DNA of 55,522 bases, counting the filler, from Platydemus manokwari (Eukaryota), in assembly GCA_037951405.1 (NCBI GenBank). It is 5 parts of 5 records of this genome, joined end to end, with 100 filler letters (N's around TTAATTAATTAA, not from the genome) between each part and the next. Parts side by side here need not be neighbours in the genome. Positions count along the whole stretch, not along the records: positions 1 to 13,647 come from JBBMOY011656959.1; 4 more parts are not named here. One strand, written 5' to 3'. The position numbers and the translations under genes are program-made. The notes below the pieces were generated by a model. It searched no databases, was not told the origin of the DNA, and was given only the letters and a program-made list of their open reading frames with translations. Below are positions 1-13,647 of this stretch, in pieces. Position 1 is the first letter of the stretch. Each line of letters opens with the position of its first letter.

Positions 1-201
1 CGGAGATGCCATGATCGAGTTTTTTAATTCCAAAGACGAGACTTTCTATAAAAATGGTATCCAAAACTTGGTTTCACATTGGCAGCAAGTTATTGAAGCA
101 GATGGGGGAATATGTAAATGATTAAATAAATCTCAATCAAAATCTTTTTCAATTTTATTCTTTTAAAAAAAAACGGACATTACTTTTCGGATGACCTAAT
201 A
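1..201 (+). mobile_element. 3' end of a mariner (Tc1/mariner) DNA transposon: transposase C-terminus plus right TIR and TA
   Basis: Frame from nt 2 reads GDAMIEFFNSKDETFYKNGIQNLVSHWQQVIEADG, the typical mariner C-terminus (EFF.SK...FY..GI..L..RW..V). Removing one G from the G run restores the usual ...DGEYVND* ending, so the copy is frameshifted. It is followed by a TIR-like sequence at about 170-199 (revcomp TTAGGTCATCCGAAAAGTAATGTCCGTTTT) and TA at 200-201. Confidence 0.85.
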
Positions 202-3200
202 TTATAAATGATGTATGATTTTACAGGTATTATATCTTACTACGATTTCTTTTATTTTGGGCTTCGACTCCTTAGAACAAATATCAATATCCAGTAATTG
301 CTGGGCATAAACTTCTGAGAATAATGGCGAGAATTTGACTGGCTTTGACGGTTTGCAAATCGAATGTTTGGTCTTCGTATGTAAAACACTAAAGCTAGTG
401 GTTTCTAATATTAGGGCAAAGCTACTAATGTTATGAGCCTATTAGTACTGATTATATTCAGGGCTAATTTTCATTGAATTGAGGATCTTATTGATTTATT
501 CTAATGGATTTGCGTTTTTAATGCGGTTATTATCTTTGTTATAGTAATTCTCATTGTGTGGAAATCGTTATCAATATTGAGTTTTATTTATTATTTTGTT
601 ACCAAGCCAGAATATTGAAGCGATTTATTATTTCTATTTATCGTATATTTTATAAATGTCATATTTTATTTTCGATAAGAGTGAATTTTTTGACATTTAA
701 TGTGGGTAATTTATTTGTTACTAGGGACTTATTTTAAATTAGTTATTATTTTATTTGTTTTACTTTGCTACTATTTTATTCTGTTGAGGATGCACCTTCC
801 TCGTCTTAATCAACAAATATATTGAAATCCCAACATTAATCAACCATGTCTTTATCAACAAATCCCAAATTTAAATCCAAACATTATACCTTCATCGCCT
901 TCATCAGTAAATATATTGAAATCATAACATTAATCAACCCTGTCTTTATCAACAAATATTTATCAACAAATAATAATAACTGCAATAATAATACCAATAA
1001 AAGTACAAATTATAAAATAAGTTATATTTTATCTGATCAAAAAGAAAACGAAATAAATCAGATAACAAAGAAATAAAAATAATAATAACAAAAATCCATT
1101 ATATTCGATTTTTATCAGATTAAAAAGAGAACATTACGAATGATTAACAATAGAGAATAAATTTAGTAACAGCCATTGCGATGTAAAAATATGAGAAATA
1201 AAAAATAATATCAAAGAATAAAAATGGCGCCAGTCATAGAAACGGCACCATAGAAAACAGTATATAAAGCAAATGAAAAACATAGTATTCATCCCACCAC
1301 AATCACTTCGAGACAAGCGAACATTACACAGCACGAGTGACAATTCAAGCAGTATCCAGCAATCCTTCGAATTGGTTTTCTGACAGTATTCGTAAGCTTA
1401 TTTTTGATCATTGATTCAATGCGTAATTATTGATTAGTTCATCTCATCAGTTATTAAAAATCTTGTTGTTGTCTCCCTGATAATCTCCTTCCGGTACTCG
1501 GAATTTTGAGTATCAAGTAGTAATCTGTGTACTAGGCATTTGGCAAATTTGTTTTTGTTCTCTTTTATTGTTGCCTATTTTCGTTTCTTAAATAAATCAT
1601 TTAATTAATTAAAGGGTTATTTAGTGTTATCATTTTTGGTAAACAAGGTTATTATTACTATTCTAACTTATAGATTACTCTAATGTCAATGAGATATCAC
1701 AAGTCCTGGTTGCCACAGTTAATTATATCTCTCAGGGTTACCATTTTTAACCTTTTTTCAGTCTAGTTTCCGATAGCTTCGTCCTCATACGAGCTATTGA
1801 AGCCCTCGATGGAACCAGTAATATCACTAACCCAACCTTACCACACATCCAATATATAAAATAACCATAAGACTTTCCAGCATGATAAAAAAATATAATT
1901 AGAATAAAAATTGCTACGACAATAGACTGATACAGGGATGAGTTTTGTACAATATACCAAGATTAAGAATAAAAATTTCATGCACATATATTCAAATGGA
2001 TTCAATATCTCCAGATTATTGTCACATTGATTTTCATCAGCTTGATTTTTTAACCGTCTTTATTTTTTGTCTTTTTCATTATTTTTTTTTATTTTGCTGA
2101 AGTGTTATGTCTGTTTTCCTTTATGTTTCTATTTTTCGATTTATTTCATTCCTCTTCTATTTTTATATTAATTTTTTTATCTATTTTTGAATTTCTATAT
2201 ATTTTTTGCTATTACTTATTTTTAGGTTGTATTAATTTTCACGGATGACTCAAAGATATTTTACAGCTATTTACTATCAATATTGTAGGATCTATACTCA
2301 ACAGAACTTTGTCCCAATGATTGACTCATTTTAATTGGGCTTTGTCTGAGACGAAACCAGAAAGTCTTTGTCACCTTACAAGAGTGAGTTTGTTTGGAAA
2401 ATAGAAGAAGAAAGCCTCAATGAGCAGAAAATAATGACTTTGTCAATCACAAATAAAGCCGGACTAGGCGAGGGCAGTTAGGTTAAAAAGCAAAATACGA
2501 CTCAAGCATTTCCAAGTATTCCGTACAAAGCAAACAAATTGTACAAACAAGAATAATAACTAGAAATCTTTTATCGGCACAAATCGGAATTATAAATCAA
2601 ATACATTGATCATCAACACAAGGATCAACTTTCTTTAGTCTTTGCAGATAATCAGCCATTCAAAATATATTTAAAACAGGATTATCAATGATAAGACAGC
2701 GTTGTTTCTATCAAATAAATCGGGTTAAAATCTCGACCATATCTCCCACCTCACCTTCTTAAAGTTAACAGGTGCTGGACCATTAAGCAACACAAGTGAC
2801 AGTTTTCACTGAGACGCTAAGTTATTGGATTATATTATAACAAATTTAATTATTTATAATCATAAGACATTTTTATGTATTGTCATTGCGTTTGTCTTTT
2901 ATCGATTTTGATAATTATTATTGGTATAAATATAATGAAATTAGTGACAACAAGCGACCAGCATCTCAATTTATCAATAATTATCACCACTTAAAAAGTT
3001 TCAATTAATCCAAACACTTCCTTATTTTTGATAATTTTTTTTATTGAGATAAACAAGTCAAATGTGAAAAATCTGTGCTTTATCGTAATATTTTTACAAA
3101 TCATACAGTTGTACCTTGAGCTTCTCAATAGTCATAATAATCTTGTCATAATAATCATAATAAACATTCATCTCTTAGTTATCTAATTATTCGTTTATTT

Positions 3201-4458
3201 CTTCACAATAACACACAGCATCTTTTGCATTATCGATGGTGAACTGATTCCATATAACCTATTCATATTGTTTATCTTTAACTAAAATCTAGTAAATATA
3301 TATTTGGTATGTATCTGATTTCGATATCATTTGTTTTTATTAATCAATTTTCCATTCATTATTTATATAAATGTGTTTCTGAGCTATGTGTTTTGAAACA
3401 TGGTTTCTATATGGTATTGTGATGATACGATTTGATTATAAATTAAATTAAACAAATTAAATGATTTAATTAAAAAAACATTATTAATAACAATTTGGTT
3501 TTAACGGGCCATACGGGATTTAATTTCAAAAAACTGATCTACTACAACGAAATTCATATCAGTTTATGACCTAAACATATGAATGGAATTTCAAACATAG
3601 GTCAAACATATTATTCAGATAAAAATTAAACAAAACAATATCTATTATTATTCATAAGAGAAGATTTATGCACACATTCATAGGCGTAAATTTACAATTC
3701 AATAAACCGTGACAAATGAATTCAATGAAATAAATAGTTTCAATAATGTTTCACATTTGATTGAATATCATGAATATATGTGTGATCATCAATGATAGTT
3801 TGTTGATATGATTTGGAACAATTTAGAAATTAAATACAAACCAAATATAATCAAAATGTTTGAGGTGAAAAAATCAATAAATTATACTATTATCAATAAT
3901 TGATATTGATTTCGAAATTATAATTGCTAATATGGCCGTACAAACCTGGTTATAAATGGAAATTTCTGATTAATATTAGAATTTTCAATACTTGAAACAA
4001 GAATTCAAGATCTAATTCATAATTTGTTTTTTACGAGTTTAAAAGCAAATTAAATCCTCTCAAACCCTGGAACCATTTAATAACACTCAATAATGTTAGT
4101 AAATTTTAAATATTATTCTGAATATATTCTTGTAAAAGTCTCAAATCAAACAATAAATATTTCCCCATGATTCACTGATCTAAACTTGGCATTCACAACA
4201 TAAGGACCACTGGTTCAATCTTGAATCCATCTGTAAGTTTGAACCCAATCATTTGAAATAAATATTCTAGTTTATTTCAAAACATTAAGTATTCATAAAA
4301 CAGTCATTTCAAACGGTTAAAATTGCATATTTTAGAAATCAATATCTCACAAATTCTCAATTCTCTTTTGATCAATGAATCTTGGTCTACTAGATGTGTG
4401 TTGATAAACAAGAAACCTAACAGCTGTAATTAATCAACAATAAATAATCCCCCTCAAA

Positions 4459-4524
4459 CCAATTATCAACAACCAATCAAATTCGACCAATCACCAATAA
4501 CAACAATAATATTTATGACGTCAT
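4459..4524. promoter_or_regulatory. Cluster of four CCAAT boxes plus a perfect CRE palindrome
   Basis: CCAAT at 4459, 4473, 4487 and 4494; ATGACGTCAT at 4515-4524. No target gene identified. Confidence 0.3.
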
Positions 4525-4893
4525 CATTACCATACAAAAACAAAGTTGGAAAGCTAGTAATAATATTTATTTCCATCAGTAGCATAAATATAACATAAAT
4601 TGTTACCAAATATTATTTACGATAAATATTTACCAACACATAAATATTCGAATAAATAATGATAATAATAATAATAATGATATTGATAATTATAATCAGC
4701 TGACATCGATGCATAGAGAACGCAGTATTTTTATTATTAGGATAATCTAAAGCGAATTTAAGGCCGATTAAACAGTTTACAGAGATTAATTATCATTGAC
4801 AAAATGAAAAAATAAACACTAATTTCATATTTTCAACAAATAATTATATTACTGGCTTCTTAATAAATAATCGTATGGGCAATTCCATACGAA

Positions 4894-6630
4894 TTATAAA
4901 CGCCTCAATGCTTTTTTATGTTGTGGAATCGGTCGTTTCTGGCTACTGGGTTCGGACATGGTCGTTGGGTGATCGTTGGAATTTATCTTTTTGGCAACTG
5001 GCCCAGCATCGTTGCTGTCAGAATTGGTTTTCAATCTGATAGAAATCGAATTATATGTTGTGATAAAATTGTTCAGTATAAATTAATCATTGATGTATGA
5101 CTGCACATTGAAAACAGTTGATTTAATTCGTGACAAAAATAATTGGGAGGATAAAAATAAATCGCTCATTAGCAGAGAAAAAAAATAATCAGATATCCAA
5201 AAGCAAAAAGAATAAATTAAAATAAAAAAATAAAGGAAAAAATAAAAGTTATAAAAAATGTATGGGCTAAAGCAATATTTGTTATAAAAATAAAAATAAT
5301 TTCAAAGAAAATGAAATGCCGCTATGCATCGGTGAATTTGTCGATCAATGTTTGCTAAATTCGTAGAAATGTCAGTGGTGTAATGGAAATCTGCCTATAT
5401 TATCACCAGTGCATATCATAATCGTTTCCATTTCTCATCCAATTGCAACTGACTCATCACATGAATCACTGCTTGTACGTGTTTGTGTGTAGGTGCACAC
5501 ACATGAACTCTACAGATCAGGTGTATCCAACCAGATATACAGTGCTTGTTCAACAATATGCACACACACACACAGGCACGCGCGTACTATCTTAAAAATG
5601 ATGGTACGCGGTAAACATTGACAGAATAAATAAACCGACCAACTAAATCTGAAAGACAATCCAACAAGTATCGTGTTTGAAATCATTTAGTTTCATGTCA
5701 GAACAAAAAAAACATTTTATTCTGCCGTGGGAACCCGAAAGTAAATCACATAAAAAAGGTTTAAAAGATCTCAAAAACATTGATATTCTGATTTATCTCT
5801 CCTAGTATTATTTCTTTATTTATTAAAATTAATCCAAAAAACAATTTTCCAACTGGAAAAATTAATAGAATTGTAGCCCGTTTTAAAAAATTATTGATTT
5901 TTTCAGAGAAAATTATAATGTATAATTTGAAAATATAATTTGCCAACTTACATTGCGCTGATTGATGGATTATTCACGGAATTTGATACTTGTGGTTGAT
6001 CAGAAATAAAATTACCGGACCCGGTAACAGTTTGAGCAGCATAAATACTCGTAAATAATCGAGCACGTTTAGCATATTCTGAATAATCTTCCAATAACAA
6101 GTGACCGGCCTCTTCATTCAATGCCGATTCGGGATTGGGATAAATCAACAAACATTTGACTGTCTAAAAAATATTTCCCATCAACGTTAAGCTTGACAAA
6201 ATATCGATAGTAAATTTTAACTATTAAATTTATATATAATTGCAAATTCATACTAAAAGAATTTTCTTAATTCCAATATCAGCAGACCAATCTCTTTTCA
6301 ATGTATTGACACAGATTTCACCGTTTTTCGGTGATATATTTGGATGAAATATTTTCGTGATAAAAAACCCTTTTGGGGCTTGTTGTGGATATGAGTTGGA
6401 TAATGATATTCGTATTCTAAATTTTCCATTTTCATAAGGCGTATCGGTGGGACCGTCTATTATTGCCTAAAGTGAATAATATGATTCCATATCCTCTACA
6501 TTGTAAATACTTGAATATCAGTGATTTCTCTTTCGTTTGTTAATAATGTTATTCCTTCAATTGGGTTCGACATTAACTGGCGAATTTCTTGTCCTATCTT
6601 TTTTACAACATGAGGTAATAAGTTTTCCAT
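4894..6630 (-). CDS. UBE2S: Ubiquitin-conjugating enzyme E2 S (K11-chain E2 of the APC/C), 228 aa, 4 exons: 6630-6511, 6466-6254, 6163-5952, 5035-4894
   Basis: The spliced product begins [16 protein letters not shown]. It contains [35 protein letters not shown] (catalytic Cys) and [18 protein letters not shown], and ends GPVAKK...KKALRRL*, the UBE2S-specific tail. All three introns are GT-AG (44, 90, 916 nt) and the phases are consistent. Confidence 0.95.
5329..5750 (+). ncRNA. Candidate structured non-coding RNA of unknown family, antisense within UBE2S intron 3
   Basis: A GC-richer island in an otherwise A/T intron. A closing stem (5329-5355/5611-5638) encloses helices 5359-5466, 5478-5580 and 5581-5610. 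Two further hairpins follow at 5641-5692 and 5694-5729. Most non-Watson-Crick pairs are G-U on the plus strand. Confidence 0.5.
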
Positions 6631-9600
6631 TTTTAAATATCTGTAAATCTTATCAAAGTAAAGTCTAAAATGTATAATTATTAAAAGAATTCAAATTATA
6701 TAATATTACAATTTTTTATTTTATATGCAAAATATAAACAAATTTTAATTACTGAATTAATTTAATAAAAAATGTAAATCACATTTTAATTTTGACAAAT
6801 AAAGTTATTTTGATTTATACTAAAATATCTTTTGTTTAAGGATTTATTTAATCAATTGAGCTTTTAATCTGAATGAATATTGTCAGTTATTATTTAAATT
6901 ATTTTTTAAAAATTTTCTTGATGTTTATTCTTGAGATTGTTTAAGATTTTACAAATCAAGATAAATATCGAATTAATTTATTAGCGCAATATCACAATGT
7001 TTTCATATTTAGATATGTTGTCTAGATTATTTAATGTTTTCTGAATAATACATAACCATGCTCGAATTTCAAGGTGAAACTCAATTGGTTTTATAAAATT
7101 TTTCGAAATGACTTCTTGAGTTTACTTAAGATTACATAATTACATATGTTGATTCCATAATATGGGTGGTATTTTTTTAAGTATTTGATGTTATGGATTT
7201 TATGTAATTTAATTTAGTGATAATCATATAGCAACAAATTTAAAGATTGATTAAATTGAAAATTATATTAGTAAGAATAGAGATTAGATGGGAAGAGGTG
7301 CAATAAATAAACAAGGAGTAAGAAAATGATAACAAGAGAAGAAATAGTTATATAAAGAAAAATATCCTACAATTATACAAATTAAAATATAATTAAAAGT
7401 AATAAAAATATGCCAAATAATAATAAGCGAATTAAGCAATTTGGATTCGATGTGGAGTAAATTCCTTTGAAAAAGTAGCTGTTGTTGAGGTCTGGATATG
7501 GAGAATAACTGCGACCAAAACGTAGAAATCTGCATCTCATGTGTCTGTTCTGTTTGTTCAAGTTGTTTATTATGGTCAAAAGAACTTTAGCTCGTTTTTG
7601 AATAATGAGTTTAAATTAGGAATGCACTATTTCAAAATATTATTAGTGTCTATGCTGTGCCTGACTCCAAAGGCACAGTAAAAAAATAATGGCAATAAGT
7701 AGAAATAATTTAGGTAACGAATATATAATTTTCAAATCAAATGATGCTTAATAATCAATGTATAATAACCAGGTATTTAATACGCCTTTATTTTTAATTA
7801 TCAGTCATTGTTTTATTTAGGATATTAAGAAATCCTTGTATGAAAAGCTGCTAGGTCCTTCTGGTTGATTTTAAGCTTGTTAGGAGCTACAGAGTCCAGC
7901 AAATATTGAAGAGCAATATGTGATGAGTTTGAAAAAATTGAAGTAGTTAGTAAATAAGTGACTGGACTAGATTCAGGCCACTATTAGCTATGTTATTCAT
8001 TAAATTTATTATAGGAAGATTCATTGATAATTTTCAAATAATAATAAAATTAATGTTACTTTGTTGTAAATTTTCTATTGAAAATACTCTCTAATAATTC
8101 CTGCCAATGAAAGTAGGTTTTATATAATCCGTTATAAGTGGTGCTTAAAATCTTTAGCAATCGTATATAATAGTGCAATAATTGTAGGCGTATTGTTTTG
8201 AATAATTATGGGTGTTGTCTGGTTTTTCATGGTTTCTTCAATTCTAATTCTCTTCTTTTTAAACTAATTATCATTTTTTGTTGTTTTTATATTTTACCTA
8301 TACTACTTTCTGTATTGGTAAATTTTATTTATAGGTTTATTATATAGTATCAATTTTTGGAGGGTCTGATTCATGGTTGTTTAAAACATTTTATGTGGTT
8401 TTAATTATTGTTTATGTTTGGGTATTTGGTATCCAACATACCCATGCAATGCATAACTAAGTAGGTGAAAGATACCAAGAAACCATAACCTCCAATCCAA
8501 TAGAAATCTTGATCTTCGAAAATAGAATCAATATCAAATCTTATCTATATTTTGTTCTGTATAATTATTTTATATCTTTATCTGTACCTGGAACTATATA
8601 AACCAATGAAAATCCAGTTGGGACATATTAAAAATTACCACCAAGGTAGCTCTTGGTAACAAATGAAGGCTTAAAGAGATTAAGTTTAAAAAATAATCGA
8701 ATCTGTAATACTGACATTTGTGGATGACACAACAGAATTCTTGTGATAATCAATGGTAATAATAGAAGCTTTCGATTTAGACAATAGAATTATTAAATTT
8801 TTTGAGTGGGTGTGGTTTTTAAATTATTTGATCTATCTGGTTCTGACTTTATGTCACCGAATGGGCTTCGATAGTATGGATGAAGATTTTACTTTCTGTA
8901 ACTGGCTATCTAAAGGTTCCTTTATAAGTTTATAATTGAGTTCAACTGTACTGAATATAACCTAGGTTTTAACATTTACTAAATATATTCGATTACTAAT
9001 AAACGTTTAAAATAATATCGTCTAAATTGCAATTAATAATCAATATGATTGTTGAATTTGATTCTATACGATAACGACCTATACACAAAAAAGGAAGCTA
9101 TTTCAATGAAATTTTATTTGTGAATAGTCGAAAAATCACAAATTAAAAATCATAAAGGATTACGAAAAGATTTTTAGACAATGTCCAATGAACCACCTAA
9201 ATGAATTATTTGAAATTCAAAGCGGTTTGACAAAGTAAGAGGTTTGGATTTTTATTGTAGTTATTTAAACTTATATTGTTGAATTACCAAGGACTAGGTG
9301 ATAAAATTGAAGTCTAAATATAACTATTCTCACTTCTCTGCTCATATTAGTAGTTCAAAAAGATAGATTAATAAACGTGTTCTTCTTTTTTGTTAGATTC
9401 TATTCAAATTAACTTATTATTCGTTGTGATATTAGTGATAGTTATGAAGCTGGCAAAAATAAAAACTAAATGAAGTGATAAAGAACGCTCAAGACTGGAA
9501 AGAATTATGAAGAAATGATTCAAGTTCATACGTAATGTGTAGACAAACCGAGAATACAAATGAGTGAAAAAGAATGCTTCTGAGATAATTCAGAAATACA

Positions 9601-11859
9601 AGAAAAGCCTGCTAAGTCTGGAAAAGAAACAAAGTTTGTAGAGTTCTAGTCTAAAATTGGACACAATTAGAAAGACAACAAACTAGCTATTTTTTGAAGA
9701 AAGTGGTTTGGATGTTATTCTTGAATGGAAATCTAATTATATAAACGATTCCTTCAGAAATCTAGAAAATCCGATAATGGACATCTTAAATGCACAAGTG
9801 GAAGAATTTGTTCCAAGACAAATAGTAGTATTCAATAAACATCAAGAAGAAGAATTTACACCCATAAAAAGAATGATAAAGAAGAAGAAAGAATATTTCA
9901 TCATTCACATGAATACAGAACCACCATAAACCGTCATAAAAGATAGAAATAAGAAGAGAAAGTCAATTGATCCATGCAATACCATTAAATACATAATATA
10001 CCTTGTATTTCTCAATATACCAAGAAAGTTACAATGAAGTACATAGCATGAAAATCCGAAGGAAAATTGGAACAATTAGAGACACAAAGACACGTCTGCG
10101 GAAATACCGAGAAATATTTAGGATTTTTGTCACCAATACTAATCGAAATTTCAAGAACCATCAAAACATTTACTCTAATCATGATTATCGAAACCAGAAT
10201 TTTCAAAATCCCAATCAAAATGAGGAAACAACTAAAATTCTCAGCATAGTATAAAATTGACAAATCTGATGGGCATTGGAGAAAATATGCGTGAAACCAA
10301 TGAAATGATAATTAATATGTGTTTAATGATAAATTTTAATCAAATTGTGTGGGTGGTTGTCACTTTTATTATTATTATTTTTCAACCTCAAGTAATTGCT
10401 GTTGTTTAAAATGAAATGTTAATTACGTCATCCACACCTTCAATGGATGTGTTGGGTATTATAATCAATAATTTAAACCTGAAAATTATATTGCCAAAAA
10501 TGTAAAAATCTCAATCACAGCAACTACAGTTAAACCTCTTCTCAAATCACTATAGTCTATCACACAAGATGGGATCAGCACCCGAAATTCAAAGACAGAA
10601 TAGAAAACAACCAAAAAGACTGGTTGCTGAAAACCAAGCAAAGATTAATACACAAGTAACTGACTAAACAAGACTGGTAGTTAATCATGAAACTCAGCTT
10701 ATTTTATAGACCTATTAGATGTGTCTGTTTGATGTATCTGGTCTTCGTTTTTCATTTGCTGAATTCGTTCGGAAATCGGTCTGTTTGAAATTTTCCGAGT
10801 ATCTCTTATGCAATTGCCAGCTGTTTGAGTTTGCTTCTATTTGTAAGTACGTGCCTGTCGATTCTTAGCTTCTAAATACTGATTAATATTAAAACGAATC
10901 CGATTGGCTGAAGGCACATGTGTTTATAGGATCTGTGTCGACTTTTTTTAGGGTTACTTCCTTGGTTCCTGTGATCCTTTTGGTTGATTTGTGAACTAAC
11001 TAACTGATTTTACCCAGTCTAATCATTTAACTAATTTAATCTTTAATATTCTTATTAGCTCTATATAAATCAAGAGGGGTTACTGGAACATATAATCAAC
11101 ATCATGAACTCTTGTGACGAAAGTATAAATGACTCACAATCATTTCTATAGAAACAATAGCACCATATATTAAATAATACTTGTGATTGTTTTCTAATTA
11201 ACTAATTTTTATTTGATCATTGTTGTCTCTATTATTTAAATTATAATTTTATATATTAATTTGTATTTGCTATATCTTTAATTATATATTATTAAACATC
11301 ATTCGTTATTTTATTTGATGTCAGGTATCGCTTTATGATAATAATCATATTAATATATATGTTGGCACATTTTACTGAGCCTTGTCGAAGCTAAAATTCC
11401 TTAATAATAATATTACCATAAAGCCATTATAACCATCAAAAATAATAGTAACATCGTGACTAAAACAATTATTACATAATCGATAGAATTCCAAAATCTT
11501 TCAAGCAATTTATAGTTATAACAATTTTTCAGGTTGTGCCAATAAAATGTTTGATGAAATAAAAGAAAGATTGCCAGTAAATTATCAATTGGGAATGCAT
11601 ATAATGATCCATTTATTTTTCCAATCCGAAAATCGTGGTAAATTTTTCTGTTAAATACTCGAAACCGTTCGGAAAAATGTTTCTTATTTTATGAAATGGA
11701 GGAGAAAAAATAATAAAAAAAACATTAAAACGCTGTCAACAAATATCCGATAAAATGACCAAATAATGCAAACCTAGAATCATTTAAACACCCTTTTTTC
11801 ACTAGCTGATATCAACGACAGGACTTTGTTAACAAAGTTCTAATTCTTGTCGATTAATT

Positions 11860-12650
11860 AACCATTTCTGAAATTCTTTTCAGATTAATCGACTATAAGA
11901 AACAACAAGGATGATGGATTGAATTCTGGTTTATATTGATATGTTTTTAACTGCATTCATGTAATGCCAGCAACTCTGGGTTACACGCATACGGTAGCCA
12001 ACAGAGTAAGCTATTCAAATTATTCGCTGTTATTTTCATTGCTGTATATTGTTCAAGATAATTCTCTTTGACTCTTGCATATCCATTAGCATCAATTCGG
12101 ATTGGTCACAAAGAAAATTATTTTATTAATCGTGAAATTAAACATTTTGGATAATTGTTGTGAATGAATATGTAAGCCAAATACATGGAATCATCATTAT
12201 AAATTCAAAGTTTCCCCTAAGATTAATCTTAATAATTTAGATTCCTCATAATAGTCATCATATTATTGTACAAGCCTTTTACGTGAAATAATCCATTAAG
12301 AGATTTATAGCTCACAGATTTGACAATAGTGATAACATAAAATTATTGTTATTGTTATTATTAAAGGTACCTATCCTGCGAGATAAAATTCACTCGGGTA
12401 ACCCTTCTTTATGATCACAAATTCCCACACTTAAAAATAAACGGAAAATTGGTAAAGATTTTAGGTTCACGTATCTATTTAATTGAGCGACACTTACAAG
12501 ACTATAATGATATCCATGAACTTCACATAATGACAAGAAAATAGATAACGTGACTGCTTGATCGATAATTCTATAATGATGATTATTTATGGTTTCCACA
12601 ATATCATATCAGGAGTACGATTATAATCAGTGATTTCTGGGAATCTTGGA
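11860..12650 (+). mobile_element. Heavily decayed Ty3/Gypsy pol remnant (RNase H and integrase fragments)
   Basis: Broken-frame motifs in the Gypsy order: NASNSGL (~11964, DAS..GLG-like), LFAVIF and PLASI (~12020-12097, RNase H), then IYGFHNIIS (~12585) and ISDFWES (~12626, integrase core-like). Confidence 0.4.
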
Positions 12651-13647
12651 GCATCAGATAGCTTCACCAAATTTGGCTAGTTAAATGTTCCAAGAGAGAA
12701 AAACAATTATTTCTCCAAATGATCAAACTGTGTCTGAAATAAATCCAATGTGATGTAATTGAATTTCGTTTTATTTTCATGGATGTTTTTTGACGTTTTA
12801 TTTGGACAAGTCTAATAAATCAATCAGCTTATAAGGCTGAATTGTCTTTGTTCCAGTTCCTGTGTTTGTCTTAGTTCCACTTTCAGAATTCTTTTTTCTC
12901 TGCGTGGAAAGTCTTTGTCAAAGAATTTGAACCGATCTCAATTTGACATACGTAAAATTATGTTAATATCTTTGCCAATTTATTATAATTATTATATTAT
13001 TATTCCTTGGCATCGATCTCTAAATCATTTTTCCATTCAATGTTTTCGTCTATAAAATTGCTATTTTTCTGGCTAATAAAAATTTGCACATCTGACAACA
13101 TTTTCATCTTAAATTTACATGAATATATATGTACGTGTGTGTATAATAAGAATCAAGAATACTGCTCAAGGAGATAAAGATAAAATATTGTCATCTTTCG
13201 ACTTTCCGTTATAGAGCTAGAAGACGACCTTGGTTTTATCTTCACTGGACATTCGGCTATTTTTTATCCAGCTTAATTTTCCTTATTAAGTTATTGTAGT
13301 CCAAATTTCACAAAAACCAACAACAAACCAACAGCACAAATTCAAAAAATCATTTATTATTTATATCGAATCTCTGTCTTTTTCAATGGGTTATTTGAAA
13401 TGAAATCTATCAGGAAATTTTATTGATTTTTTCAAAACATGTTAACAATAGTAATTTTGATAGATAATTAAAATTAAAATTTTATTATAATGAGCTTTAT
13501 CAAAAATTAATGTTGGATTGATGACAGGAAATCAATACAGAATTTCGATTTAGAAATGACTCATCGAATAAATATTAGGCTGAGTCAAAAGTTATTCATG
13601 TTTTTTAGTTGTTTAAAGTTTTTGTTTTACCAAATCATTTAAACATA

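What the first reader, a model, noticed from the sequence alone, without database searches (positions are those of the whole stretch)
5329..5750. Unassigned multi-helix structured RNA candidate antisense in UBE2S intron 3
Seen: this 916-nt intron, in a genome where most introns are 40-60 nt, holds a GC-richer island that folds by eye into a four-way junction. The closing stem is TCGGT 5329-33/ACCGA 5634-38 and TCAATGTTTGC 5345-55/GTAAACATTGA 5611-21. Arm A is ATTCGT 5359-64/ATGAAT 5461-66 and GTCAGT 5371-76/ACTGAC 5448-53. Arm B is CGTGTTTGTGTGT 5478-90/ACACACAGGCACG 5568-80, with inner TGAAC/GTTCA and GTGTATC/GATATAC. Arm C is CGCGTACTATC 5581-91/GATGGTACGCG 5600-10. Arm B, arm C and the closing stem abut with no spacer, as in coaxially stacked junctions. 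Two more hairpins follow (AACTAAAT 5641-48/ATTTAGTT 5685-92; CATGTCAGAA 5694-5703/TTCTGCCGTG 5720-29). There is an ANANNA at 5700 and an ACA at 5748. Nearly every stem has G-U pairs on the plus strand; only two positions favour minus. A CAGTG 5407/CACTG 5467 pseudoknot is possible. Inference: an independently transcribed ncRNA antisense to the host gene. I could not find canonical motifs of RNase P/MRP (P4), SRP, U3, the 7SK 5' end or a TTAGGG telomerase template. It may be a highly diverged member of one of these, or a new family.
Basis: partly seen in the sequence, partly recalled or inferred. Interest (0 to 1): 0.75.

Follow-up and report, generated by a model that had tools for sequence, protein, structure and literature searches.

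The report
Orphan folded island in UBE2S intron
A single-copy, GC-richer stretch of about 430 bases in an unusually long intron folds into three tightly stacked helices far better than chance, but nothing available shows whether it is a new structured RNA gene or only a leftover cluster of inverted DNA repeats.

Summary
The 310-nt core (5329-5638) folds far beyond chance: z -6.7 on +, -3.7 on -. No other 310-nt window of the piece goes below -2.5. Only three elements carry the signal: a 23-bp interrupted closing stem, a 103-nt hairpin whose outer stem is a (TG)n/(CA)n repeat, and a GC-clamped 11-bp hairpin. These three abut without spacers. "Arm A", the two 3' hairpins, the pseudoknot and the H/ACA-like boxes are at chance level. 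The claimed plus-strand G-U bias is weak once mismatches are counted without reference to a fold.

No Rfam family matches. An exact RNase P/MRP CR-I motif has no P4 partner. There is no telomere-template candidate, no terminal stem for a C/D motif on the minus strand, and no target-site duplication. The only sequencing run that holds the island is DNA and shows one copy at 80% likeness or more. No RNA run and no relative closer than about 64% protein identity could be reached, so expression and covariation remain untested.

My verdict: a real, orphan structured element. I put an RNA-level function (strand open, + slightly favoured) at about 0.45, a DNA-level inverted-repeat relic at about 0.40, and sense-strand intron roles below that.

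The parts
5036..5951 (-). Host intron 3 of the UBE2S-like gene (916 nt, GT..AG). Exon 3 is 6163..5952 and exon 4 is 5035..4897, ending KKALRRL-stop.
   Evidence: The hydrozoan-like relatives lack this intron.
5312..5750 (.). Compositional island. GC is 0.34-0.46 against 0.20-0.22 in the flanks. There are no homopolymer runs of 4 or more between 5312 and 5593. It is single copy.
5329..5355 (.). Closing stem, 5' strand. It pairs with 5611-5638 in blocks of 5+6+1+11 bp, 21 Watson-Crick pairs and 2 G-U on +.
   Evidence: As a minimal hairpin it gives -24.0 (+, z -8.1) and -17.1 (-, z -5.0).
5356..5477 (.). It is not significantly structured on either strand. It carries a CR-I-like motif (5366-5377, +) and box C/D-like motifs (5460-5454 and 5375-5372, -).
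   Evidence: (z -0.23/-0.36).
5478..5580 (.). Arm B, a 103-nt hairpin. The outer 13-bp stem is formed by (TG)n against (CA)n with 2 G-U on +. The inner helices are 5, 5 and 7 bp.
   Evidence: z -3.26 on +, -2.41 on -. Weak mir-466/mir-297-like hits arise from the low-complexity stem only.
5581..5610 (.). Arm C, an 11-bp GC-clamped hairpin with an 8-nt loop. It abuts arm B and the closing stem with no spacer.
   Evidence: (-17.1, z -8.9 on +; -12.2, z -6.6 on -).
5611..5638 (.). Closing stem, 3' strand.
5639..5750 (.). Its composition matches the island but its folding is at chance. Heterozygous sites at 5737 and 5740 mark its edge.
5282..5289 (+). TATA-like octamer about 30 nt upstream of the island's left edge. 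This is a possible promoter element, by inference only.
   Evidence: Read from the sequence. Such motifs are common in this AT-rich DNA.
5715..5718 (+). First T4 run on the plus strand after the island starts, a possible Pol III stop (inference). On the minus strand, a T8 run (5712-5705) and a T5 run (5599-5595) would stop Pol III before or inside the core.
   Evidence: The absence of T4 over about 400 nt is not significant (expected about 2, P about 0.13).

Best explanation
The island is a single-copy structured element that acts at the RNA level. It is a roughly 310-nt core inside a roughly 430-nt GC-richer segment. An interrupted 23-bp closing helix brings together two hairpins (103 nt and 30 nt). 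These stack on it without any spacer, each helix ending in G-C pairs at the junction. A 122-nt largely single-stranded strand is left exposed.

This architecture suits a protein-binding scaffold RNA with an accessible single-stranded segment. The strand is not settled. The plus strand, antisense to UBE2S, is somewhat favoured, at about 60:40. On that strand it could be an independent transcript running from about 5312-5320 to about 5718-5750.

Shown: the fold, its statistical excess, single-copy status, the compositional boundaries, and the absence of any known family. Inferred: that it is transcribed as a discrete RNA, the strand, the ends and the scaffold role.
For: The core z is -6.68 (+) and -3.70 (-), with 0 of 100 shuffles as stable. 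It is an outlier against 44 background windows of the same piece, whose minimum z is -2.5. The signal does not depend on the CA/TG repeat. The same three helices reappear when the whole 916-nt intron is folded on either strand.

The three helices abut exactly at 5580|5581 and 5610|5611 with G-C closing pairs. Independent DNA repeats have no reason to do this.

The whole island, including its unpaired 230 nt, is GC-richer and free of homopolymer runs, with sharp edges. It has one copy in the only holder run, on one unitig continuous with exon 4, with no skipping joint and no high-depth organellar or rDNA source. No other GC-containing inverted repeat or strongly folding window occurs in the 13.6-kb piece. 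There is no coding signal.

For the plus strand: the closing stem and arm C are together 12 kcal/mol more stable on +. The whole intron gives z -5.0 on + against -0.7 on -. Pol III-type T runs interrupt the minus strand but not the plus strand.
Against: There is no expression data and no orthologue, so no covariation test was possible. A z near -7, perfect helices of 11-13 bp and a microsatellite-built stem are more typical of DNA inverted repeats or hairpin precursors than of classical structured ncRNAs. More than half of the island is not significantly structured.

The strand asymmetry is within what random transition mismatches would give, about 6:3 in a fold-independent count. Part of the z difference between strands is a composition effect, because the G+U-rich minus-strand shuffles fold better: -77.6 against -69.9. 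No promoter or terminator can be verified in this unknown organism.
Confidence: 0.45

Rival explanations
1. The island is a DNA-level relic. A short foreign or mobile segment, or a local series of replication template-switch inverted duplications seeded at a (TG)n/(CA)n microsatellite, landed in the intron and made it unusually long. On this reading the closing stem is a pair of decayed terminal inverted repeats, and the folding of any transcript is a by-product without function.
For: The closing arms look like 27-nt imperfect terminal inverted repeats 255 nt apart, with a 310-bp span typical of miniature elements. The outer stem of arm B is a dinucleotide repeat. Both strands fold far better than chance, as DNA palindromes do.

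The mismatch spectrum is roughly 6 G-U(+), 3 G-U(-) and at least 6 transversions or indels, which is compatible with neutral decay. The intron is absent from the nearest relatives found, so it may be a lineage-specific gain. Template switching is a documented source of perfect hairpins (PMC8794818, PMC5453318).
Against: There is no target-site duplication of any usual length at the stem ends. There is no second copy at 80% likeness or more in the holder run, in the window, or in 84 related loci. The island extends about 110 nt beyond the 3' 'terminal' repeat.

The exact, G-C-clamped abutment of three helices is unexplained by this reading. Arm B shows perfect blocks separated by fully non-complementary loops rather than scattered decay. 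No comparable repeat occurs elsewhere in the piece.
Confidence: 0.4
2. The island is a sense-strand element of the host pre-mRNA. It could be an intron-processed small RNA (snoRNA-like or hairpin/miRNA-like), or a structure that shortens the effective length of a long intron in a genome that otherwise splices tiny introns. This is a sub-case of an RNA-level role, counted here apart for the minus strand only.
For: The minus strand is certainly transcribed as part of the UBE2S pre-mRNA. On it, the core still folds at z -3.7. Arm B forms a near-continuous 38-bp hairpin on the minus strand. A perfect box C (5460-5454) and a box D (5375-5372) lie 78 nt apart on the minus strand. Structural splicing helpers are known in yeast long introns (PMC12350175, PMC2536676).
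Against: There is no terminal stem adjacent to the box C/D pair; the nearest complementary hexamers are 7 nt off and hold an A.C mismatch. The closing stem lies 313 nt from the 5' splice site and about 250 nt from the likely branch site, so it does not bridge them. The whole intron on the minus strand folds no better than shuffles, z -0.73. The mir-466/297 scores are 22-25 bits against gathering scores of 85-90. The closing stem and arm C are weaker on this strand.
Confidence: 0.15
3. The fold is a chance product of AT-rich, low-complexity sequence.
For: AT-rich DNA gives many 9-11-nt inverted repeats by chance. Arm A, the 3' hairpins and the proposed pseudoknot are indeed at chance level.
Against: Zero of 100 shuffles reach the core energy on either strand. 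The background windows never approach it. The stems are the GC-richest part of the region and are not low-complexity, except for the outer stem of arm B.
Confidence: 0.03

Closest known systems
Telomerase RNA core domain (core-enclosing helix, single-stranded template strand, hairpins; H/ACA tail in animals)
   Same: A long closing helix encloses a long single-stranded strand followed by hairpins. The size is 300-450 nt. It is single copy and is not found by Rfam, as is usual for telomerase RNAs of divergent lineages. Intronic location has a precedent in Caenorhabditis (PMC12921731), though there in the sense orientation.
   Different: No stretch matches 1.3 or more copies of the complement of any common telomere repeat. 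There is no credible pseudoknot. The H/ACA reading fails, because the box lies inside a stem, there is no hinge, and the hairpins are at chance.
Miniature inverted-repeat or foldback transposable elements
   Same: It has imperfect 27-nt inverted termini spanning 310 bp, a strong fold on both strands, an internal microsatellite and an intronic location.
   Different: It has no target-site duplication and no other copy at 80% or more. Its interior is GC-richer than its surroundings. It also contains two further hairpins that abut the terminal repeat exactly.
T- or Y-shaped terminal hairpins of parvovirus-type single-stranded DNA genomes (my own knowledge, not tested)
   Same: A closing stem encloses two smaller palindromes that abut without spacers.
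   Different: A 122-nt unpaired strand lies inside the closing stem. There are no viral genes nearby, and there was no match in viral contigs for a 22-mer of the junction.
RNase P / RNase MRP RNA
   Same: An exact match to the eukaryotic CR-I consensus GNAANNUCNGNG occurs at 5366-5377 on the plus strand. The size class also fits.
   Different: No CR-V element can form helix P4 with it. There is no Rfam hit even at E = 10. The motif is expected by chance about 0.03 times in the stretch scanned, and many motifs were tried.
mir-466 / mir-297 CA/TG-repeat hairpins
   Same: Arm B is a hairpin whose arms are TG-rich and CA-rich. These are the only Rfam families to give any score.
   Different: The scores are 25 and 22 bits against gathering thresholds of 85 and 90. 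The similarity is low-complexity only, and those families are rodent-specific repeats.
Zipper stems of long yeast introns (PMC12350175, PMC2536676)
   Same: It is a long-range helix inside an unusually long intron of a genome with short introns.
   Different: It does not bring the 5' splice site and branch site together, being 313 and about 250 nt away from them. The sense strand is the less stable one.

Membership tests
Any Rfam 15 family | Covariance-model score at or above the family's gathering score | tested here: not met
   There were 0 hits at gathering over 1-13647. At E up to 10 over 5100-5950, only low-complexity miRNA and bacterial sRNA noise appeared.
RNase P / MRP RNA | CR-I consensus GNAANNUCNGNG | tested here: met
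   There is an exact match at 5366-5377 on +. Chance expectation is about 0.03 for the scanned stretch.
RNase P / MRP RNA | A CR-V element able to pair with CR-I to form helix P4 | tested here: not met
   Four one-mismatch CR-V candidates exist on +. None is complementary to 5369-5376 in the P4 register (checked by hand).
Telomerase RNA | Template holding more than one copy of the telomere-repeat complement in a single-stranded region | tested here: inconclusive
   No match was found to 15 known repeat types in the island. The organism's own telomere repeat is unknown. The only partial tandem motifs in the linker (for example at 5425-5434) are not G-strand-like.
Telomerase RNA (animal type) / H/ACA RNAs | Hairpin, hinge with ANANNA, hairpin, then ACA 3 nt from the end | tested here: not met
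   The two hairpins are separated by 1 nt. The ANANNA at 5700 lies inside the second stem. The ACA at 5748 is 19 nt past the stem. The hairpins give z -0.95.
Box C/D snoRNA (minus strand) | Box C RUGAUGA and box D CUGA 60-90 nt apart | tested here: met
   GUGAUGA lies at 5460-5454 and CUGA at 5375-5372.
Box C/D snoRNA (minus strand) | Terminal stem directly flanking boxes C and D (kink-turn stem I) | tested here: not met
   The flanks immediately next to the boxes are not complementary. The nearest complementary hexamer is 7 nt downstream of box D and has an A.C mismatch on this strand.
7SK RNA | 5' hairpin with paired GAUC/GAUC motifs, and an Rfam 7SK or Arthropod_7SK score | tested here: not met
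   The GATC sites at 5343 and 5515 do not face each other in any predicted helix. There is no Rfam hit.
Miniature inverted-repeat transposable element | Terminal inverted repeats | tested here: met
   5329-5355 pairs with 5611-5638 through 21 Watson-Crick pairs and 2 G-T.
Miniature inverted-repeat transposable element | Target-site duplication flanking the repeats | tested here: not met
   No 2-, 3-, 4-, 8- or 9-bp direct repeat lies at the stem ends, and no flanking direct repeat of 9 nt or more was found.
Miniature inverted-repeat transposable element | Many dispersed copies in the genome | tested here: not met
   Depth over 5341-5497 equals that of the single spanning contig, and no other contig aligns at 80% or more. 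Copies more diverged than 80% could not be looked for.
Intron zipper stem | [quoted passage not shown] | tested here: not met
   The stem ends lie 313 nt from the 5' splice site and about 250 nt from the putative branch site. The minus-strand whole-intron z is -0.73.
Independent Pol III gene (type 3) | Upstream TATA and proximal element, no internal T4 or longer run, and a T-run terminator | tested here: inconclusive
   On +, a TATA-like motif lies at 5282-5289 and the first T4 is at 5715-5718. Both are weakly informative in 72% A+T DNA, and the organism's proximal element is unknown.

The most novel reading that the evidence does not exclude
The island is the gene of a previously undescribed structured non-coding RNA of about 400 nt, in a poorly sampled, fast-evolving animal lineage, transcribed antisense from within the UBE2S intron. 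It might be that lineage's still-unidentified telomerase RNA or a 7SK-like scaffold, with the 122-nt exposed strand as the working surface.
Probability: 0.25. Interest if true: 0.6.

Novelty: new member of a known kind. Interest (0 to 1): 0.38.

Why it matters
If it is a real RNA, it would be an orphan structured RNA of the size class that holds telomerase RNA, 7SK, RNase MRP and U3. The lineage has no close sequenced relatives, and such RNAs are usually missed by homology search there. It would also be an example of a gene nested antisense in the one long intron of a compact gene.

If it is a DNA relic, it serves as a caution. Very negative folding z-scores on both strands, microsatellite-built stems and fold-defined G-U counts can mimic an RNA gene. 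It would also document how a tiny-intron genome acquired a 916-nt intron.

Tried and rejected
- **Rfam:** nothing at gathering and nothing at E up to 10.
- **tRNA scan:** nothing found.
- **Telomere-template scan:** 15 repeat types and a generic scan for partial tandem motifs gave nothing credible.
- **Motif scan** for P/MRP CR-I and CR-V, 7SK, box C/D, Sm site and A/B boxes: only an isolated CR-I match and an isolated C/D pair, both failing the second defining feature.
- **Coding potential:** no ORF over 58 aa and no Pfam hit.
- **Transposon signs:** no target-site duplication, no second copy in the window and none in the holder run.
- **Organellar or rDNA origin:** rejected, because no high-depth contig matches.
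- **Bacterial or viral origin:** a 22-mer from the junction is absent from both collections.
- **Orthologue hunt:**
  - An exon-3 word search gave a best hit of 57% over the full length.
  - A metagenome locus scan returned 80 loci, with at most 59% identity over the whole exon.
  - blastn and nhmmer of the island against all 84 loci found nothing.
  - A profile search combining a full-length relative with the window's exons found nothing above 64% identity to the window's exons.
  - Covariation was therefore unreachable.
- **RNA evidence:** only one holder run exists, and it is DNA contigs.
- **Failed runs:** two background z-scans timed out before a lighter one succeeded.

Full report
**Context**

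The finding lies in the last intron of a four-exon UBE2S-like gene on the minus strand.
- Exon 1 runs 6630 to about 6511, exon 2 is 6466-6252, exon 3 is 6163-5952, and exon 4 is 5035-4897, ending KKALRRL-stop.
- Exon 2 hits the ubiquitin-conjugating enzyme domain at E 2.5e-24.
- Introns 1 and 2 are about 45 and 87 nt. Intron 3 is 916 nt, 5951..5036, GT..AG.
- The rest of the 13.6-kb piece is 28% G+C and holds no other recognisable gene, tRNA or Rfam RNA.

The 310-nt core 5329-5638 folds at -97.9 kcal/mol against -69.9 +/- 4.2 for dinucleotide shuffles, z -6.68, with 0 of 100 shuffles as good. The reverse complement gives -93.4, z -3.70.

Twenty-two other 310-nt windows spread over the piece, folded on both strands, gave z between -2.5 and +5.6, and no energy below -65.5. 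The island is therefore a clear local outlier. The same three helices come back when the whole intron is folded on either strand.

Taking the fold apart shows that three elements carry the signal:
- **Closing stem:** 5329-5355 with 5611-5638, 23 pairs in blocks of 5, 6, 1 and 11. As a minimal hairpin it gives z -8.1 on + and -5.0 on -.
- **Arm B:** 5478-5580, z -3.3 on + and -2.4 on -.
- **Arm C:** 5581-5610, an 11-bp hairpin, z -8.9 on + and -6.6 on -.

The outer 13 bp of arm B are a (TG)n run against a (CA)n run. Deleting arm B still leaves z -6.2 on + and -3.5 on -.

The other parts are at chance:
- The two 3' hairpins (5639-5735) give z -0.95/-0.6.
- The 5-bp pseudoknot and the H/ACA-like boxes carry no weight. 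The ANANNA lies inside a stem, the two hairpins are 1 nt apart, and the ACA is 19 nt past the last stem.

The object is therefore three helices and a 122-nt open strand, not a four-way junction with an H/ACA tail.

One striking feature is confirmed. Arm B, arm C and the 3' strand of the closing stem follow each other with no unpaired base, at 5580|5581 and 5610|5611, and each helix ends in G-C pairs at the junction.

**Composition and copy number**

From about 5312 to 5750 the sequence is 34-46% G+C, against 20-22% in the rest of the intron. It has no A4 or T4 run between 5312 and 5593, whereas the flanks have one every 15-20 nt. This holds for the unpaired parts as well as the stems.

The only public run that holds the sequence is a set of DNA contigs. 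Laid on 3300-8000 at 80% likeness or more, one contig runs uninterrupted from 4701 to 5736, through exon 4 and the island. Depth over 5341-5497 equals that contig's own depth. No contig skips the island, and no high-depth source such as organelle DNA or rDNA matches it.

There is no second copy in the window. None occurs in 84 loci around distant UBE2S relatives. A junction 22-mer is absent from the bacterial/archaeal and viral collections. No direct repeat that could be a target-site duplication flanks the closing stem. There is no coding signal.

**Strand**

The plus-strand fold has 6 G-U pairs in the three strong elements. But helices were delimited on that strand, so mismatches that would be G-U on the minus strand are counted as loops. 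The minus-strand MFE in fact has 16 G-U pairs overall. Aligning the arms as DNA repeats gives about 6 plus-type transitions, 3 minus-type transitions and at least 6 transversions or indels, which is not a significant bias.

By energy, the plus strand wins for two of the three elements:
- Closing stem: -24.0 (+) against -17.1 (-).
- Arm C: -17.1 (+) against -12.2 (-).
- Arm B: -35.2 (+) against -36.8 (-).

Part of the z-score gap between strands comes from composition, because the G+U-rich minus-strand shuffles fold better. Runs of T8 (5712-5705) and T5 (5599-5595) on the minus strand would stop Pol III before and inside the core. The plus strand has no T4 from the island's start to 5715-5718, but with about 2 expected this is not significant.

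I put the plus strand at about 60:40.

**What it is not**
- No Rfam family reaches its threshold. At E up to 10, only CA/TG-hairpin miRNA families score, at 22-25 bits against gathering scores of 85-90.
- An exact RNase P/MRP CR-I consensus sits at 5366-5377 (+), but no CR-V element can form helix P4 with it.
- No template-like complement of 15 known telomere repeats occurs in the island.
- On the minus strand, a perfect box C and box D lie 78 nt apart, but without the adjacent terminal stem that defines a C/D snoRNA (sequence).
- The closing stem lies 313 nt from the 5' splice site and about 250 nt from the likely branch site. It therefore does not act like a yeast zipper stem (PMC12350175, PMC2536676). 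The sense-strand intron as a whole folds no better than shuffles.

**Relatives**

The decisive test, covariation in an orthologous sequence, could not be run.
- An exon-3 search found nothing above 57% identity over the full length.
- A metagenome scan found 80 loci, with at most 59% identity over the whole exon.
- A profile search combined a full-length relative (L006, hydrozoan-like: 77% to Clytia, 74% to Hydra) with the window's exons. It listed animals of many phyla, none more than 64% identical to the window's exons.

The source is thus a divergent animal without sequenced close kin in these collections. The nearest relatives found have exons 3 and 4 fused, so intron 3 may be a lineage-specific gain.

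**Weighing the explanations**

These points favour an RNA-level (or at least structure-level) function:
- the exact, G-C-clamped stacking of three helices;
- the compositional island that includes the unpaired parts;
- single-copy status in a genome that keeps introns tiny;
- the absence of any comparable inverted repeat elsewhere in the piece.

These points favour a DNA-level relic:
- the extreme z on both strands;
- perfect helices of 11-13 bp;
- the microsatellite stem;
- the large unstructured fraction;
- a mismatch spectrum compatible with neutral decay;
- known mechanisms, namely mobile elements and replication template switching (PMC8794818, PMC5453318), that create such repeats far more often than new RNA genes arise.

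I put the DNA relic at about 0.40. The sense-strand intron roles (about 0.15) overlap the first figure. Chance is at about 0.03.

**Limits**

Motif consensuses for RNase P/MRP, 7SK, C/D and H/ACA, and the comparison with parvoviral hairpins, rest on my own knowledge of those families.

Noticed in passing
window 4871-4892: A perfect 8-bp inverted repeat (TCGTATGG / CCATACGA, 6-nt loop) starts 5 nt downstream of the UBE2S stop codon on the minus strand. It may be a 3'-UTR hairpin.
   Followed up: no
window 7539-7876: Several contigs of the holder run align here at 80-95% with many substitutions and indels, and summed depth rises to about 62. This looks like a dispersed repeat, unlike the single-copy island.
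   Followed up: no
window 5036-5951 versus L001:3591-3890 and L006:124-774: The nearest UBE2S relatives found (hydrozoan-like, about 30% G+C) encode exons 3 and 4 as one uninterrupted reading frame. The 916-nt intron may therefore be a gain in the window's lineage.
   Followed up: partly
window 5366-5377 (+): There is an exact match to the eukaryotic RNase P/MRP CR-I consensus, but with no partner for helix P4. It is probably chance.
   Followed up: yes
window 5454-5460 and 5372-5375 (-): On the host's sense strand, a perfect box C (GUGAUGA) and box D (CUGA) lie 78 nt apart inside the linker, without the adjacent terminal stem. The would-be guide upstream of box D could not be compared with the organism's rRNA.
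   Followed up: partly
window 5577-5584: A perfect 8-nt palindrome ACGCGCGT is centred on the arm B / arm C junction. The two hairpins therefore share a self-complementary GC-rich joint, which allows alternative pairings there.
   Followed up: no
window 5737 and 5740: Two variant letters (G>A, A>C) in about half the depth, together with a contig break, mark heterozygosity right at the 3' edge of the island. No variant was seen inside 5329-5736, but about 0.5 would be expected, so this is uninformative.
   Followed up: partly
window 4655-4696 and 5205-5248: An (AAT)14 microsatellite lies downstream of the gene. An A-rich low-complexity tract in the intron attracts many unrelated contigs, with a depth spike to about 240.
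   Followed up: no
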